The notes under the pieces: model-generated | What the model was told of the DNA's origin: nothing | Seen by the model: only the letters and a program-made list of their open reading frames with translations | Databases searched by the model: none | In this document: in pieces, positions 3,894 through 55,832 of the stretch | Position numbering within the stretch: position 1 is the first letter of the stretch | How the letters are laid out: each line of letters opens with the position of its first letter | Sequence record: NC_062582.1 | DNA: 64,000 nt | Direction: 5' to 3' (one strand) | Translations under genes and position numbers: made by a program

Positions 3894-3968
3894 ATCCGGT
3901 AAAAATAGATACGTGAAGAATTCAGTTATTGTTACATCAAAAAATCCATCCTACGTAGGAAATAAAAA

Positions 3969-6197
3969 ATGTCTTATTTGAAATCGCTGTTGAAAGCTAA
4001 TGCTGATCAAGCTCCAACTACCTTCTCTATGGAGAACTTCCTGGGTCTTCTGGCCGAAGGTCAAGATCTGAGTGGTAGTGTATTTAACGCAGCTCATGGT
4101 CTGACCAAGTCTGTTGGCCTGGAATCCTTTGGTGATGCCAAGCACGAAGAAACCGTTACCATTAGTGCTATGTACAAGAACCTGCAAGGTCTGTTGACTC
4201 GTTCGGGTTTCGAATCGTTCCTGAGTGAAAACAGCCGTGTAGCTGAGAACCAAATCGTTGCTGCTACTACCGCTGCCATCGCTGCTGAAAACCCTAAAGA
4301 GTACATCAAGGCTCTGCGTAACCTGACCAAGGCTCTGCCATCGACCGAAAGCATCCGTACCGTTGAACAATCGTTCGCTGGTCCACACGGTTCGCTGCAA
4401 GTATTCCAAGGTGATGCCGCTAAGAACATCGGCCTGGAAAACTACAACGAGAAATCGCAGCGTGACTTCCGTGTTGTTACCGTTGGTTATAACCTGGCTG
4501 CTAGCCGTCAGGATGAGTTCGCTGAACGTATCTACCCAACTACCGTAATCAACCCGATTGAAGGTGGTGTTGTTCAAGTTCTTCCTTACATCGCTGTACT
4601 GAAAGACGTTCATCACTCGGTTACTGGTGCCCTGTGGGATACCAAAGAAGTAAACATGGTTGAAGCATACCGTGACCCATCCATCCTGGATGATAACGCT
4701 ACCGACCTGATCCCAGCTATCGCTCCTGGTGGCGAGAACCTGAAATACTTCGTAGACCCAGCTCTGATCGCTCCTGAGACTGTAGTTAACGAACAAAACA
4801 TGTCGATCGAAACTGCCCCACTGAAACCAGGTATCAAAGTTGACCTGATGGGTATCTCGAACGCCAACTTGCTGATCAACGCTAACATGCTCGACGTGTC
4901 TGACACCATCGACCCTGCTGGCCGTCTGAAAGCTCTGTACGTTAAATTCGAAGGCGAAGTAATCCGCTTTAAAGTTGACCGCATGCCACGCGCTGTGTTC
5001 CAACCTGACCTGATCGGTGATACCCGTGGTGCTAAGGTTGACTTCTGGACTGACGACCTGTCGGTTTCGGCAATCACCCGTACTATCGGTGGCGCTGCTA
5101 CTTCTGTTATCACTGAACTCGAAACCCGTAAATGGGTACTGCGTATCAGCGTTCAATTCTCCGGCGTTGTTAGCCTGAGCAAAGGCGAATCCCGCTTCAC
5201 CGTTGGTGAGTGCTCGGTTGCTCGCATCCTGAACGAAGATCGTCGTGATATCGATATCACTGCTGGTCCTGGTGCTGCTTTGGTAGCTAAACTGGCTGAT
5301 CTGGAAATCATCGGTTTCGACCTTGATTGCCGCTTCACCAACACCAACCGTCGTCAGCGTGGTCACCTGCTGCAAACTCGTGCCCTGCAATTCCGTCACC
5401 CTATCCCAATGCACGCGCCAGTAACCCTGCCGTTGAGCACCATGGATGAAGAAGGTCCAGGCGAAGTTGTTAAAGCACTGACTGTTAACACCAACATCCG
5501 TAACAGCAACAACGCTGTTAAGACCCTGCTGAACTACCTGGCACAACTGCGTGAACTGACTGGTAGCGGTTTCAACCGTCCATCGATCAACGTTTACGAA
5601 GGTGCTCTGGCTTCGGTAATGCGTCCTACCTACGTTTACGGTAATCTGCACCTGCCAGACGTAATCGATACCCTGAAGTCGAAAGACCGTTGGGACGACG
5701 TTTGCTCGGCGATCCTGAACTACGTCAAAGGTCAACTGTTCCCTGCATACCGGAACTCTAACATTGAAGCTGCTTTCCGTGTTATCTCTGGTAACCAAGA
5801 CGAACGTCCAATCTTCCTGTTCTGCTCGGACAAAGAGATTGCTAACTACCTGATGACCAAAGGCGATGACCGTACCCTGGGTGCTTACCTGGAATACGAT
5901 ATCGTATCGACCAACAACGAACTGTTTGACGGTAAGCTGGTAGTAGTACCGACCCGTAAGAACCCAACCGAGAACGACATCCTGTCCTTCGGTCAGTTCT
6001 TCTACGTATCGACTATCGTAGCCGACCTGCCAATCAGCCGTGGCGGTAACCAGATCACTCGCGAAATCGCAGCGATCCCATTCAACCTGCACATCAACAA
6101 CATTCCTTTCGCTCTGGAATTCGACATCTCCGGCTTCGCCGACGTGATGGGTACTTCTCAGTGGAACAAGCCGTTGATTGACGCTGTTAAGGCTTGA
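3969..6197 (+). CDS. Major capsid protein precursor (phiKZ gp120-like)
   Basis: 742 aa; strongly biased codon usage; SME/GLE/GLE cleavage-type sites in the first 160 aa; size and gene order match phiKZ MCP. Confidence 0.9.
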   Translation: MSYLKSLLKANADQAPTTFSMENFLGLLAEGQDLSGSVFNAAHGLTKSVGLESFGDAKHEETVTISAMYKNLQGLLTRSGFESFLSENSRVAENQIVAATTAAIAAENPKEYIKALRNLTKALPSTESIRTVEQSFAGPHGSLQVFQGDAAKNIGLENYNEKSQRDFRVVTVGYNLAASRQDEFAERIYPTTVINPIEGGVVQVLPYIAVLKDVHHSVTGALWDTKEVNMVEAYRDPSILDDNATDLIPAIAPGGENLKYFVDPALIAPETVVNEQNMSIETAPLKPGIKVDLMGISNANLLINANMLDVSDTIDPAGRLKALYVKFEGEVIRFKVDRMPRAVFQPDLIGDTRGAKVDFWTDDLSVSAITRTIGGAATSVITELETRKWVLRISVQFSGVVSLSKGESRFTVGECSVARILNEDRRDIDITAGPGAALVAKLADLEIIGFDLDCRFTNTNRRQRGHLLQTRALQFRHPIPMHAPVTLPLSTMDEEGPGEVVKALTVNTNIRNSNNAVKTLLNYLAQLRELTGSGFNRPSINVYEGALASVMRPTYVYGNLHLPDVIDTLKSKDRWDDVCSAILNYVKGQLFPAYRNSNIEAAFRVISGNQDERPIFLFCSDKEIANYLMTKGDDRTLGAYLEYDIVSTNNELFDGKLVVVPTRKNPTENDILSFGQFFYVSTIVADLPISRGGNQITREIAAIPFNLHINNIPFALEFDISGFADVMGTSQWNKPLIDAVKA

Positions 6198-6278
6198 ACT
6201 GGAAAGGGAACCTTCCGTACTTTGGAAGATGGCACTCGCCGGACTTTACAGGACGGACAGGCCCGCCTCTTAGAGTAA
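6198..6278 (+). other. In-frame 26-codon extension after the MCP TGA (TGKGTFRTLEDGTRRTLQDGQARLLE*), candidate read-through tail
   Basis: In frame with MCP, no in-frame ATG, 54% GC, lies before the terminator; matches the C-terminus of the 32658-33191 protein. Confidence 0.6.
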
Positions 6279-6291
6279 AGAGGTAAAAGCT

Positions 6292-6332
6292 CGACATTTA
6301 GCCCAGCTCTTCGGAGTTGGGCTTTATGCCGT
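6292..6332 (+). terminator. Terminator hairpin of the MCP transcript
   Basis: agcccagctc-TTCG-gagttgggct followed by ttatgccgt. Confidence 0.8.
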
Positions 6333-6344
6333 CAATAGAAAAAG

Positions 6345-6375
6345 TTCTAAATCTATATTACGTATCTGAATGTAA
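6345..6375 (+). promoter_or_regulatory. Early promoter (TATATTAC)
   Basis: TATATTAC at 6354-6361 matches the phiKZ early consensus; 28/29-nt copy at 55801. Confidence 0.75.
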
Positions 6376-6399
6376 ACTCACTCTTCTAGGATATCTCCG

Positions 6400-6807
6400 A
6401 TGAACTTCTTTGAATCTTATGCTGACCTAGTCATGCTAGAGCTAAATGAAGATGGTTCCAACATCGGCGATATCGTCGTTGATTGGGAACAGCTTTGCAA
6501 GAAAGAAAGTACTACCAATAGTAATGATACATCTAACGCTGCACCAACTACCAAACATAATAACCGTCCATTTAAGGATGGTAATATGCCCGGTCGTACT
6601 AACCCTGCATTCAAACCTAACGAAGCAGAAGAAACAATCAAGTTGAGAAAGATATGGCGCAACAACACTACTACGAAACTGAGTCGTTCGGAACCCGTGC
6701 ATTTAAACAACCATCATCTCAAAGGCGAACACGTAATTGTGAGGAAGGTGGATACGACGTTCAGACGAAAACAACTAGGAAACAAGTCAGGACCCGTGGT
6801 AAAGTAA
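6400..6807 (+). CDS. Hypothetical protein, acidic N-terminus and basic C-terminus
   Basis: TAGGA RBS; first ORF after the early promoter. Confidence 0.55.
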   Translation: MNFFESYADLVMLELNEDGSNIGDIVVDWEQLCKKESTTNSNDTSNAAPTTKHNNRPFKDGNMPGRTNPAFKPNEAEETIKLRKIWRNNTTTKLSRSEPVHLNNHHLKGEHVIVRKVDTTFRRKQLGNKSGPVVK

Positions 6808-30061: not shown

Positions 30062-30967
30062 ATGGCTGATCCAGTTCCAAATCCAATTGACCAACAACTT
30101 ATCAACGTTGTTCGGACTTGCTATTCCGCAGCACTGCAAACAACTAAGTATCTCGGACTTACACCGTTCGTTATGCTTGAGAACACAACCCTTAACCAAA
30201 AGTACGGTATTCAAAATGGCGTAGCTCCAGCTGCTGGCGAGATGCCAAACGTACGATACATGGTTATTGGTAACATGGGTCACTACACCATCAAAGCTTC
30301 TGATGGTTCTGATGAAACAGCAAACGTACTGCATCGCTCTAATGACGCTGCTTTGTATAACGGTATTCCTTTCGTGGTTCGTGAACCAACTAATGATTTA
30401 CCTGCTGATCGTCGTGACCTGTATTGCCTGCGTACACAAGAAACTTATTTCGGTAAACCTTACATCGTTTATTATGGTCGTCGTATTTCGATGACTGGTG
30501 TTCGTCCACAACTGTTGGAAATCACCGTAGTAGATGGTGTAATCCAAACCGATACTTACACCCCGACCGTTAACGACTTGAACCCTAAGCCACCAGCTAT
30601 TCCAAATACTGGTACTGTAATCGGTTCTAACAAAACTATCTCAGCTTCTGCTATCGTTAAGGTTAACTTGACTGCTGAAGAAATCCGTGAGATTACTAAC
30701 GGTCACCGTATCCGTACTAACTCTAACCGTTCTCCGATCATCTCGGAAATTGGTTTGTGTTCTGGTGTAGACAAGCGTGTCAACGCACCTAGTTCGGGCG
30801 GCCCTGCTTTCCAATACCTGGAAGTTATCGCTTGCCAAGTGAACGTGTTCATCTCTACTAACCATCCAATCGGTTACAACTCGAACGGTCTTAACCTGAC
30901 CTTTGATATCGGTGGTGTGGAACCTACCTTGGGCTCCAATGCGGTGAACCAAGCTAAGTTTGTATAA
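30062..30967 (+). CDS. Baseplate structural protein (phiKZ gp139-like)
   Basis: [20 protein letters not shown] and [12 protein letters not shown] motifs. Confidence 0.7.
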
Positions 30968-32657: not shown

Positions 32658-33191
32658 ATGAGCGATCGTTTTCCGTACAACATGCCCTCACGGGCAGCGC
32701 TTGTAAAATTGGTTCGCGAAGATCAAAACAAACCTGAGTTGAAAGACCAAGACGTTACGTTTGAAGACATTTTCTTTTCACCGACCGAATTAGAACCTGG
32801 TCGTACCTTTATTGAGATGATTGATCGGATTACACAAATCAAAGATTGGTTTGTTTATCGCCGTTTGAATTTGTCAGACCCTGCTTGCTTGGGTCCACTC
32901 GTATCGATTAAAATTATTGGTGATCCATCTCCAGCAGCCATTGCAAAAGAGATCAACCGTTCCTTTGGGATGACGTTCGGCCCAGATGACGTTTCGTTCT
33001 CTGATGAATACATCCCGGTAAGTAACGGCGAGTTTGAATACGAACTACGTGCCTTGACTGGTAGCTATGCTTACTTCGGTAAGACCAGAGTTATGGTAAA
33101 GGTTATACAGAGTTCCCGTTGGACGCGATTCCTTGAAGATGGACGAATTCGTTATCTCGAAGATGGTATTCCTCGTGAACTGGAACATTGA
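32658..33191 (+). CDS. Virion structural protein with a C-terminal RxLEDG repeat
   Basis: FVYRRLNL motif; ends RFLEDGRIRYLEDGIPRELEH. Confidence 0.7.
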   Translation: MSDRFPYNMPSRAALVKLVREDQNKPELKDQDVTFEDIFFSPTELEPGRTFIEMIDRITQIKDWFVYRRLNLSDPACLGPLVSIKIIGDPSPAAIAKEINRSFGMTFGPDDVSFSDEYIPVSNGEFEYELRALTGSYAYFGKTRVMVKVIQSSRWTRFLEDGRIRYLEDGIPRELEH

Positions 33192-55800: not shown

Positions 55801-55832
55801 TTCTAAATCTATATTACCTATCTGAATGTTAA
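55801..55832 (+). promoter_or_regulatory. Early promoter (TATATTAC)
   Basis: TATATTAC at 55810-55817; near-identical to 6345-6375. Confidence 0.75.

What the first reader, a model, noticed from the sequence alone, without database searches (positions are those of the whole stretch)
6195..6278. Hidden read-through tail on the major capsid protein with an RxLEDG repeat
Seen: after the MCP stop (GCT TGA A) the same frame stays open for 26 codons, TGKGTFRTLEDGTRRTLQDGQARLLE-TAA, ending just before the terminator. The stretch is 54% GC (44/81), unlike the AT-rich spacers elsewhere, and has no in-frame ATG. It matches the C-terminus of the 32658-33191 protein: FRTLEDGTRRTLQDGQARLLE vs TRFLEDGRIRYLEDGIPRELE, three R-x-L-[EQ] units at 8-aa spacing. 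A small hairpin (CTTCC-gtacttt-GGAAG) follows the stop. Established: UGA followed by A is among the leakier bacterial stop contexts, and some phages make extended capsid proteins by recoding. Inference: a minority of capsid subunits carry a C-terminal docking peptide.
Basis: partly seen in the sequence, partly recalled or inferred. Interest (0 to 1): 0.85.

Follow-up and report, generated by a model that had tools for sequence, protein, structure and literature searches.

The report
Read-through tail on jumbo-phage capsid protein
Just past the UGA stop of the major capsid gene of Pseudomonas phage Phabio lies a 26-codon in-frame stretch, conserved in phiKZ and its close relatives, that encodes a peptide tag also found at the ends of many phage tail proteins, so a small share of capsid subunits is probably lengthened by stop-codon read-through.

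Summary
The window is Pseudomonas phage Phabio, a phiKZ-like jumbo phage. Its major capsid gene (3969-6197) ends in TGA, and the frame stays open for 26 codons (6198-6275) to a TAA, just before a terminator hairpin.

The evidence that this tail is coding and read through:
- In 24 of 24 relatives that carry the tail (phiKZ, PhiPA3, 201phi2-1, Psa21, Noxifer and others), the capsid stop is TGA and the tail is in frame. Length differences are whole codons.
- The tail's own stop and the next gene's stop vary freely among the three stop codons.
- Invariant Arg, Glu and Gly residues are written with many synonymous codons. The other two frames are closed in 18 of 21 sequences.
- No start codon is conserved, and three tails have none at all.
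- Codon usage drops sharply after the stop.
- Relatives without the tail end in TAA.

The tail is a true instance of a three-unit tag. That tag ends a baseplate-like virion protein of the same phage and many tail proteins of unrelated phages, and it has no Pfam model or solved structure.

Low-level UGA read-through giving a minor extended capsid subunit is the best explanation. It is inferred, because no protein data exist. What the tag does is unknown. I found no paper that describes it.

The parts
3969..6197 (+). Major capsid protein gene (PHABIO_187, 742 aa), including its TGA stop
   Evidence: ORF list. Annotation of MF042360.1. phrog_3231 major head protein, E 1e-253. PDB 8y6v phiKZ gp120, E 0.
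6195..6197 (+). TGA stop of the MCP, the proposed read-through site
   Evidence: TGA in 24 of 24 tail-bearing loci. The window's gene-like ORFs use TAA 45, TGA 10, TAG 5.
6198..6215 (+). Linker of the tail: 6 codons between the stop and the first unit
   Evidence: Linker length varies from 4 to 7 codons among relatives, always by whole codons.
6216..6239 (+). Tag unit 1 (8 codons, starts with the conserved Arg)
   Evidence: Arg 21/21, Glu 21/21 and Gly 21/21 in the aligned columns, each written with several synonymous codons.
6240..6263 (+). Tag unit 2 (8 codons)
   Evidence: Arg 20/21 (codons from both the CGN and AGR families), Glu 20/21, Gly 21/21.
6264..6275 (+). Tag unit 3: a half unit of 4 codons that ends the peptide
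   Evidence: Aligned with the C-ends of tag-bearing proteins of other phages, which end 0-3 residues after this unit.
6276..6278 (+). TAA, second stop, end of the extended product
   Evidence: Varies among relatives: TAA 13, TGA 5, TAG 3.
6212..6228 (+). GGAAG); probably incidental
   Evidence: Present in the window. No conserved structure in 19 relatives: consensus energy -0.43 kcal/mol, 3 pairs.
6300..6328 (+). Terminator-like hairpin (10-bp stem, TTCG loop) plus TTTAT; 3' end of the MCP transcript unit
   Evidence: Fold of 6186-6340, z = -2.97. In 21 relatives the stem sequences differ, a hairpin can still be read at the same place in each, and GCTTTATG follows.
6352..6361 (+). Conserved TCTATATTAC motif, a promoter-like element for the next gene
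   Evidence: Conserved in Phabio, HPP-Temi, phiKZ-type and many metagenomic relatives. That it is a phage late promoter is my inference from memory and was not tested.
32658..33191 (+). PHABIO_216, a 177-aa virion structural protein (phiKZ gp143 homolog, DUF7941/phrog_2935). The only other tag carrier in the genome; the tag lies at about 33126-33188.
   Evidence: The model resembles a chain of the phiKZ outer baseplate entry 9xqd.

Best explanation
The 26 codons after the capsid gene's UGA are protein-coding and have no start of their own. Most ribosomes terminate at the UGA and make the normal 742-residue capsid protein. I infer that a small fraction insert an amino acid there through a near-cognate host tRNA, most likely tRNA-Trp as known from E. 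coli. Those ribosomes continue to the TAA at 6276 and add about 2.9 kDa. The extended subunits would co-assemble with normal ones. By homology with the solved phiKZ capsid, the extension would start at the last residue of the C-terminal arm. That residue sits in the six-helix bundle at the centre of each hexamer and, in pentamers, touches the outer decoration protein. The added peptide is a short linker plus a three-unit, 8-residue-period tag. The same tag ends a baseplate-like virion protein of this phage and many tail tube, tail tip and distal tail proteins of unrelated phages. I take it to be a small surface-exposed interaction module for adhesion or docking. Making it by read-through keeps its dose low at a site where six C-termini converge. 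Shown: the anatomy, the conservation, protein-level selection, and membership of the tag family. Inferred: that read-through happens, its rate, which residue is inserted, exposure on the capsid, and the function.
For: 1. TGA plus an in-frame tail of 24-30 codons is present in every relative with MCP identity of 77% or more. It is also present in L021 (69%) and Noxifer (62%). The set includes phiKZ/KTN4, HPP-Temi, 201phi2-1, PhiPA3, Psa21 and Viktualia.
2. In all, 24 of 24 tag-bearing loci have TGA, and 13 of 14 tag-less loci have TAA.
3. Other stops turn over in the same genomes: the tail's own stop is TAA 13, TGA 5, TAG 3, and the next gene's stop is TAA 9, TAG 7, TGA 5.
4. Frame 0 is open in 21 of 21 distinct tails, while frames +1 and +2 hold stops in 18 of 21 each. 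pN/pS is 0.62 in frame 0 (pN below pS in 204 of 210 pairs) against 0.83 and 1.04 in the shifted frames. Third-position entropy is highest.
5. Invariant Arg, Glu and Gly columns use up to five synonymous codons, including both Arg codon families.
6. All indels are whole codons, starting right at the stop.
7. No conserved start codon exists, and three tails contain no ATG, GTG or TTG at all (L047, L052, L060).
8. None of 120 MCP clusters in the 5.8-billion-protein set has the tag fused, so the stop is always kept.
9. The codon adaptation index, scored on each genome's own MCP, falls from about 0.81 to about 0.26 at the stop. In all 21 genomes no MCP window scores as low as the tail. This fits rare translation.
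10. The tail lies inside the MCP transcript unit, upstream of a hairpin that all relatives keep at the same place although its stem sequences differ.
11. The tail is a bona fide tag.
12. Two more distant MCPs have a Big_2 Ig-like domain in frame right after their stop, one of them ending with the tag.
13. The phage has no suppressor tRNA. ARAGORN finds Ser, Leu and Asn only (PMC5543642).
14. The phiKZ capsid model shows the C-terminal arm built to the last residue, 747, at the hexamer centre, and contacting outer gp244 in pentamers (PMC11297242).
Against: 1. There is no direct evidence of translation past the UGA. I found no proteomic, ribosome-profiling or structural report of an extended MCP.
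2. No conserved stimulatory RNA structure follows the stop, and the base after it varies, so the rate may be only the basal leak.
3. pN/pS of 0.62 is only moderate, and synonymous sites are near saturation.
4. One close relative (L085, MCP C-part 99% identical to a tag-bearing one) has lost most of the tail by a single deletion. The tail may therefore be dispensable.
5. One distant relative (L030) has its in-frame Big_2-plus-tag extension behind TAA, a stop that is normally tight.
6. The 3.5-A phiKZ capsid map reports nothing beyond residue 747, although icosahedral averaging would hide a rare, flexible extension.
7. The MCP windows in the codon test are scored on a table built from the MCP itself, which inflates the contrast.
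Confidence: 0.75

Rival explanations
1. The tail is a separate small gene. Ribosomes start on their own, or restart after terminating at the UGA, and make a free peptide of about 20-26 residues that is not attached to the capsid protein.
For: Phabio has an in-frame TTG at 6222, and a purine-rich GGAAAGGGA lies 13 nt upstream. Free-standing tag ORFs of 45-86 codons exist in other phages.
Against: The TTG is not conserved: the same column reads CTT, CTA, ATG, GAT and others. Starting there would drop the first Arg, which is invariant in 21 of 21. Three tails have no ATG, GTG or TTG at all. The linker directly after the stop changes only by whole codons and keeps Gly-rich residues, so it is read as codons from the stop onward. 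The frame relative to the MCP and the TGA would have no reason to be conserved.
Confidence: 0.07
2. The stretch is not translated. It is conserved as RNA or DNA, for example as part of the 3' untranslated region, a binding site, or a decaying relic of a once longer capsid gene.
For: It lies in a 3' untranslated position next to a terminator. No protein evidence exists. One relative has lost it.
Against: There is no conserved secondary structure and no Rfam match. Variation is concentrated at third positions. Invariant residues use many synonymous codons, including CGN and AGR for Arg. The peptide matches a tag found in real proteins of unrelated phages at E 2.6e-9. A relic would have accumulated stops and frameshifts across genera whose MCPs differ by up to 38%.
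Confidence: 0.1
3. The UGA is specifically recoded, as selenocysteine through a SECIS hairpin or through a dedicated suppressor tRNA, rather than read by near-cognate leak.
For: UGA is the selenocysteine codon, and a small hairpin follows it in Phabio.
Against: No SECIS or other Rfam family matches even at E up to 10. The hairpin is not conserved. The phage's only tRNAs are Ser(tga), Leu(taa) and Asn(gtt). Noxifer's are Lys, Asn, Asp and Tyr (PMC5543642).
Confidence: 0.03
4. The extension is reached by a frameshift or ribosome hop near the end of the capsid gene rather than by reading the stop.
For: Frameshifting is the known route to extended capsid proteins in T7, T3, A2, A118, A500 and PSA (PMC5009743).
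Against: The tail is in the same frame as the MCP in all 24 loci and starts directly after the stop, so no change of frame is needed. A hop over the stop cannot be told from read-through by sequence alone.
Confidence: 0.03

Closest known systems
Minor coat protein A1 of RNA phage Qbeta (read-through of the coat gene's UGA; from my own knowledge of the classical literature, not a tool result)
   Same: [quoted passage not shown] This gives a C-terminally extended coat protein present in a few copies per particle.
   Different: Qbeta is a small ssRNA phage with an unrelated coat fold, and its extension is a large folded domain. Here the phage is a 309-kb dsDNA jumbo phage with an HK97-fold capsid protein, and the extension is 26 residues. 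No sequence relation exists.
Capsid protein extensions made by programmed frameshifting in tailed phages (T7 10A/10B, T3, Lactobacillus A2, Listeria A118, A500, PSA; reviewed in PMC5009743)
   Same: In tailed dsDNA phages, a set fraction of major capsid subunits receives a C-terminal extension by recoding. The extension is often an Ig-like domain, as in relatives L027 and L030 here.
   Different: Those use -1 or +1 frameshifts at slippery sites with stimulators. Here the extension is in frame behind a stop, and no stimulatory structure is conserved.
Coat-protein read-through domains of plant RNA viruses (luteoviruses, benyviruses, pomoviruses; PMC3542737)
   Same: Stop-codon read-through appends an interaction domain to a proportion of coat proteins.
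   Different: These are eukaryotic viruses with other stop contexts and large domains whose known role is in vector transmission.
T4 Hoc and other Ig-like decoration proteins that sit at hexamer centres (PMC10385173, PMC5292684)
   Same: A non-essential, surface-exposed appendage at the centre of capsid hexamers, at less than one copy per subunit.
   Different: Hoc and pb10 are separate proteins that bind after assembly. Here the appendage would be covalently part of the capsid protein and is a 20-residue tag, not an Ig domain.

Membership tests
Programmed stop-codon read-through giving an extended coat protein | An open frame continues in frame 0 past a leaky stop (UGA) to a second stop | tested here: met
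   TGA at 6195, 26 codons, TAA at 6276.
Programmed stop-codon read-through giving an extended coat protein | Stop identity and downstream frame are conserved in relatives while other stops vary | tested here: met
   TGA in 24/24 tail-bearing loci. Tail stop is TAA13/TGA5/TAG3 and the next gene's stop is TAA9/TAG7/TGA5.
Programmed stop-codon read-through giving an extended coat protein | The extension evolves under protein-level constraint | tested here: met
   pN/pS is 0.62 against 0.83 and 1.04 in the shifted frames. The other frames are closed in 18/21. Invariant residues show synonymous codon diversity.
Programmed stop-codon read-through giving an extended coat protein | No independent translation start for the extension | tested here: met
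   No conserved start codon. Three tails lack ATG, GTG and TTG.
Programmed stop-codon read-through giving an extended coat protein | The extended protein is detected in cells or particles at a set fraction | not testable with these tools
   No proteomic or ribosome-profiling report found.
Programmed stop-codon read-through giving an extended coat protein | A stimulatory context or structure 3' of the stop (present in many but not all known cases) | tested here: not met
   RNAalifold consensus -0.43 kcal/mol. Base +4 is A13/G7/C1/T0. The last MCP residue is mostly Pro, Ala or Gly. From my own knowledge, such residues can weaken termination in E. coli.
Selenocysteine recoding | SECIS hairpin directly 3' of the UGA | tested here: not met
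   No Rfam match at E up to 10. No conserved hairpin.
Frameshift-derived capsid extension (T7 10B type) | The extension lies in the -1 or +1 frame and is reached at a slippery site | tested here: not met
   The extension is in frame 0 in all loci.
Three-unit C-terminal tag of phage virion proteins (family defined here; no Pfam or PDB entry) | Two and a half units at 8-residue spacing with conserved Arg, Glu and Gly, ending 0-3 residues before the C-terminus | tested here: met
   Alignment A3: Arg, Glu and Gly invariant over 29 sequences. The HMM from non-jumbo instances gives 33.0 bits, E 2.6e-9 for the tail.
Ig-like (Big_2) capsid appendage | A Big_2 domain in the extension | tested here: not met
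   The Phabio tail is too short and has no Pfam hit. Big_2 is present only in the extensions of L027 and L030.
Independent small ORF | Start codon with a ribosome-binding site, conserved in relatives | tested here: not met

The most novel reading that the evidence does not exclude
The three-unit tag is a new, portable class of phage surface module: a mini-domain that phages append to capsid, tail tube, tail tip and baseplate proteins, in the same niche as Ig-like domains. On this reading, phiKZ-like phages dose it onto the capsid through the natural leakiness of UGA, because the six C-termini that meet at each hexamer centre leave room for only a rare extension. The model jumbo phages phiKZ, PhiPA3 and 201phi2-1 would then carry a hidden, functionally relevant capsid isoform that symmetric cryo-EM and standard proteomics have missed.
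Probability: 0.3. Interest if true: 0.85.

Novelty: new variant of a known kind. Interest (0 to 1): 0.75.

Why it matters
phiKZ and its relatives are the main models for nucleus-forming jumbo phages. Their capsid has been solved at 3.5 A and their virion proteomes catalogued, yet no record annotates this tail in the capsid gene's frame, and I found no paper that mentions it.

If the tail is translated, every particle would carry a second form of the major capsid protein with an exposed peptide. At a read-through rate of about 1-3%, that would be tens of the 1620 subunits; both the rate and the count are my estimates. This would be, to my knowledge, the first case of stop-codon read-through extending the capsid protein of a tailed dsDNA phage. 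The known cases in tailed phages use frameshifting.

The work also brings to light a short, widespread tag on phage structural proteins that has no family model and no structure. The claim is directly testable with existing kinds of data, such as re-searching virion proteomics with the tail peptides.

Tried and rejected
- **RNA families:** an Rfam search of 6100-6420 at E up to 10 gave only two chance-level hits and no SECIS.
- **Conserved RNA structure:** RNAalifold on 19 relatives found none after the stop.
- **Terminator scan:** the simple consensus scan did not flag the hairpin at 6300, because its T-run is short. Folding and its recurrence at the same place in the relatives show it.
- **Suppressor tRNA:** none in the window or in the rest of the genome.
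- **Fused natural variants:** none among 120 MCP clusters.
- **Solved structure or Pfam model of the tag:** none.
- **Literature:** searches for read-through in phiKZ-like phages, for the motif letters and for ribosome profiling of phiKZ found nothing relevant.
- **Representative-library search:** a single-sequence search of 1.84 billion representatives with the 30-residue C-end of PHABIO_216 gave only 5 hits. Three of them (P0199, P0201, P0203) show the tag, in several copies each. The other two (P0200, P0202) are other repeats that do not show it.
- **Upstream ORFs of small tag ORFs:** PHROG scans were uninformative.
- **Metagenome scan:** it returned only 14 loci.
- **Not attempted:** I did not fold or search the MCP joined to its tail.
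Full report
**What the window is.** The window is 100% identical to Pseudomonas phage Phabio (MF042360.1, 309,157 bp, host P. fluorescens SBW25). Window position equals record position minus 124,000. Phabio is a phiKZ-like jumbo phage. ORF 3969-6197 is its major capsid protein (MCP, PHABIO_187, 742 aa). It matches phrog_3231 at E 1e-253 and phiKZ gp120 in PDB 8y6v.

**Check of the observation.** The gene ends GCT TGA A. The same frame then runs for 26 codons (6198-6275) to TAA at 6276-6278. There is no in-frame ATG, and GC content is 44/81. A 10-bp hairpin with a TTCG loop and a TTTAT tail follows at 6300-6328. After it comes a conserved TCTATATTAC at 6352. The stretch is not annotated in the Phabio record, nor in the phiKZ RefSeq record, which has been re-annotated with many small ORFs.

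**Is it more than chance?** A single 26-codon open frame would not be remarkable. The comparison with relatives is what matters. I collected the 3' end of the MCP gene from three sources:
- annotated phages: HPP-Temi, KTN4/phiKZ, Noxifer and Viktualia;
- IMG/VR contigs, which include 201phi2-1, PhiPA3 and Psa21;
- metagenomes.

In every relative whose MCP C-terminal part is at least 77% identical, the MCP stop is TGA and is followed in frame by 24-30 codons carrying the same repeat. The same holds for L021 (69%) and Noxifer (62%). That makes 24 loci and 23 distinct tails.

- The second stop varies (TAA 13, TGA 5, TAG 3 among 21 tails), and so does the stop of the next gene in the same genomes (TAA 9, TAG 7, TGA 5).
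- In the window, gene-like ORFs use TAA 45, TGA 10 and TAG 5.
- So stops turn over freely on this tree, and TGA is the minority stop, yet the MCP's TGA never changes where a tail follows.
- Of 14 loci without a tail directly after the stop, 13 have TAA (Fisher p 2.6e-9, not corrected for relatedness).
- Four distant nucleus-forming phages (Ea35-70, SPN3US, RP12, Vibrio Yong XC31) have no tail.

**Coding signature.**
- Frame 0 is open in 21 of 21 distinct tails. Frames +1 and +2 carry stops in 18 of 21 each.
- All length differences are whole codons, including those in the linker directly after the stop.
- pN/pS by the Nei-Gojobori count is 0.62 in frame 0, with pN below pS in 204 of 210 pairs. 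The shifted frames give 0.83 and 1.04, and the last 50 MCP codons give 0.32.
- Third positions vary most.
- The invariant residues are written with many synonymous codons. The first Arg uses CGT, CGA, CGC, CGG and AGG. The second uses CGG, CGT, CGA, AGA and AGG. The Gly columns use all four codons. That pattern is expected for selection on a peptide, not on an RNA or DNA element.
- No secondary structure is conserved after the stop, and no Rfam family matches.

**Why read-through rather than a separate gene.**
- No start codon is conserved. The TTG at 6222 reads CTT, CTA, ATG or GAT elsewhere. Three tails contain no ATG, GTG or TTG at all.
- The codon-wise evolution begins at the stop itself.
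- The frame relative to the MCP and the identity of the stop are conserved, which only matters if ribosomes arrive from the MCP.
- None of 120 MCP clusters from the 5.8-billion-protein collection has the tail fused. The stop is therefore kept as strictly as the tail, as expected if the long form must stay rare.
- Codon usage supports rarity. Scored on each genome's own MCP codon table, the tail has an index of 0.18-0.37 against 0.75-0.87 for MCP windows of the same length. No MCP window in any of 21 genomes scores as low as the tail. The MCP is scored on its own table, which inflates the gap. The tail looks like an ordinary weakly expressed gene.
- The phage has no suppressor tRNA. ARAGORN on the whole genome finds Ser(tga), Leu(taa) and Asn(gtt) only, as the genome paper says (PMC5543642). 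Decoding of the UGA would have to rely on a host near-cognate tRNA. In E. coli that is mainly tRNA-Trp; this is established knowledge and was not tested here.
- The last MCP residue is mostly Pro, Ala or Gly, and the base after TGA is never T. Both are consistent with weak termination as described for E. coli, but this is a lead from memory and not a test.

**What the tail is.** The tail has a 6-residue linker, two 8-residue units and a final 4-residue half unit. The same arrangement ends PHABIO_216 (32658-33191, 177 aa) and all 78 of its homologs. These include phiKZ gp143 and its Noxifer counterpart.

A degenerate DNA pattern for two units found 45 loci in IMG/VR, where I expect about 0.1 by chance from the pattern's information content. 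Most come from contigs far smaller than a jumbo-phage genome. The motif is nearly always the very end of the protein, with 0-3 residues after the last unit. The carriers are:
- tail tube proteins (Phage_tail_2);
- gpJ-like tail proteins (phrog_1101);
- a distal-tail-protein relative;
- another tail protein family (phrog_376);
- proteins of unknown family.

Three hits from the 1.84-billion-protein library (P0199, P0201, P0203) show the tag in several copies, separated by Gly/Ser/Thr/Pro linkers, and in one case at the N-terminus. The tag therefore behaves as an autonomous small module.

An HMM built only from the 19 non-jumbo instances picks the MCP tail as the best of 2264 six-frame peptides in the window (33.0 bits, E 2.6e-9), with PHABIO_216 second. 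These two are the only hits in the whole Phabio genome. No Pfam model covers the tag, and no PDB chain contains it.

An AlphaFold2 model of PHABIO_216 (pLDDT 85.6) places the tag at pLDDT about 78-83, with short bridge residues flanking each conserved Arg at 8-residue spacing. Its N-terminal domain resembles a chain of the phiKZ outer-baseplate entry 9xqd (Foldseek E 2.9e-7). The published phiKZ atlas does not place gp143.

**Where the extension would sit.** In the 3.5-A phiKZ capsid, the C-terminal arm of gp120 is residues 728-747, which is the end of the protein. In hexamers the six arms form a central six-helix bundle with a 9-A pore. In pentamers they move outward and contact gp244, which sits on top of the pentamer (PMC11297242). 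An extension would therefore start at the hexamer centre. That it points outward is my inference from the pentamer contact. Six C-termini converging on one point gives a plausible reason why only a rare subunit should be extended.

Two more distant MCPs support the idea that this C-terminus is a display site. L027 has TGA followed in frame by a 203-codon ORF with a Big_2 domain. L030 has TAA followed in frame by a Big_2 domain that ends with the tag and has no early start codon. Other members of that clade end in Thr/Pro/Gly/Glu-rich linkers. Ig-like domains added to a fraction of capsid or tail subunits by frameshifting are well known (PMC5009743).

**Points against, and open points.**
- Nothing shows that the tail is translated. 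No paper in the library mentions it, and no ribosome-profiling data for phiKZ turned up.
- The rate is unknown. At 1-3% it would be roughly 16-50 of 1620 subunits; that is my arithmetic, not a measurement.
- One metagenomic relative (L085) has an MCP C-part 99% identical to that of the tag-bearing L017. It has lost most of the tail through one deletion whose length is not a multiple of three, and its MCP ends in TAA. If that genome is viable, the tail is dispensable.
- L030's TAA is unexplained.
- The function of the tag is unknown. Its carriers are all virion proteins, mostly at exposed C-termini, which suggests adhesion or docking. I rank this as inference only.

**Comparison with known systems and novelty.** In mechanism the closest case is the A1 protein of Qbeta, made by UGA read-through of the coat gene. 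That comparison rests on my own knowledge. Also close are the coat-protein read-through domains of plant RNA viruses (PMC3542737). In biology the closest cases are the frameshift-derived capsid extensions of T7, T3, A2, A118, A500 and PSA (PMC5009743), and Hoc-like appendages at hexamer centres.

The case here meets the sequence-level criteria of programmed read-through. It lacks a conserved stimulator and lacks protein evidence. It is not selenocysteine recoding, not a frameshift and not an independent ORF. I rate it a new variant of a known kind: stop-codon read-through on the capsid gene of a tailed dsDNA jumbo phage, delivering a tag that itself appears undescribed.

Noticed in passing
IMG/VR loci L037-L081 (e.g. 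L041:3378-3869, L046:9135-11180, L059:1800-2579, L081:5614-7527): The three-unit tag ends many structural proteins of unrelated, mostly non-jumbo phages: tail tube (Phage_tail_2), gpJ-like tail protein, a distal-tail-protein relative, and other tail proteins. It has no Pfam model and no solved structure.
   Followed up: partly
P0199, P0201, P0203 (from the 1.84-billion-protein library): These proteins carry the tag in several copies separated by Gly/Ser/Thr/Pro linkers, and in one case at the N-terminus. The tag therefore looks like an autonomous mini-module, not only a C-terminal peptide.
   Followed up: no
L067:4100-4204, L058, L061, L065, L076, L038, L045: Short tag ORFs of 34-86 codons sit right after ORFs of about 103-135 aa. 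The one in L067 has no start codon until its codon 32 of 34 and overlaps the upstream ORF in another frame, so it may be a tag reached by frameshift.
   Followed up: partly
L030:2440-2730 and L027:2425-3040: More distant MCP genes are followed in frame by a Big_2 Ig-like domain. L030 sits behind TAA, has no early start, and ends with the tag. L027 sits behind TGA with a Met at codon 3. The TAA case is unexplained.
   Followed up: partly
L085 (metagenome contig RCUK01000188.1), region after the MCP gene: This close relative (MCP C-part 99% identical to tag-bearing L017) has lost most of the tail through one deletion whose length is not a multiple of three. Its MCP ends in TAA.
   Followed up: yes
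window 32658-33191 (PHABIO_216) and 30062-30967 (PHABIO_211): The N-terminal domain of PHABIO_216 (phiKZ gp143 homolog) is predicted to resemble a chain of the phiKZ outer baseplate entry 9xqd. PHABIO_211 is the gp139 homolog found in that entry. The published phiKZ atlas does not place gp143.
   Followed up: partly
window 6352-6361 and 55808-55817: TCTATATTAC follows the MCP terminator and is conserved in most relatives. TATATTAC occurs only twice in the 64-kb window. It may be a phage late-promoter element.
   Followed up: no
L002:2052-2195 (HPP-Temi) and L033:2478-2576 (Viktualia): Both records annotate small hypothetical ORFs over the tail region in a frame other than the conserved one. 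These are probably gene-caller artefacts.
   Followed up: yes
P0106, P0107, P0111, P0116 (MCP homologs): One source names these capsid proteins 'virulence-associated protein VapD', which is evidently a mis-annotation.
   Followed up: no
P0141-P0198 (MCP homologs of the more distant clade): Many of these MCPs end in long Thr/Pro/Gly/Glu/Asp-rich low-complexity stretches, often with Pro as the last residue. The MCP C-terminus seems to be a hot spot for flexible appendages.
   Followed up: no
window 3951-6092, minus strand: A 713-codon open frame lies antisense to the MCP gene. It is most likely a by-product of the MCP's strong codon bias and not a gene.
   Followed up: no
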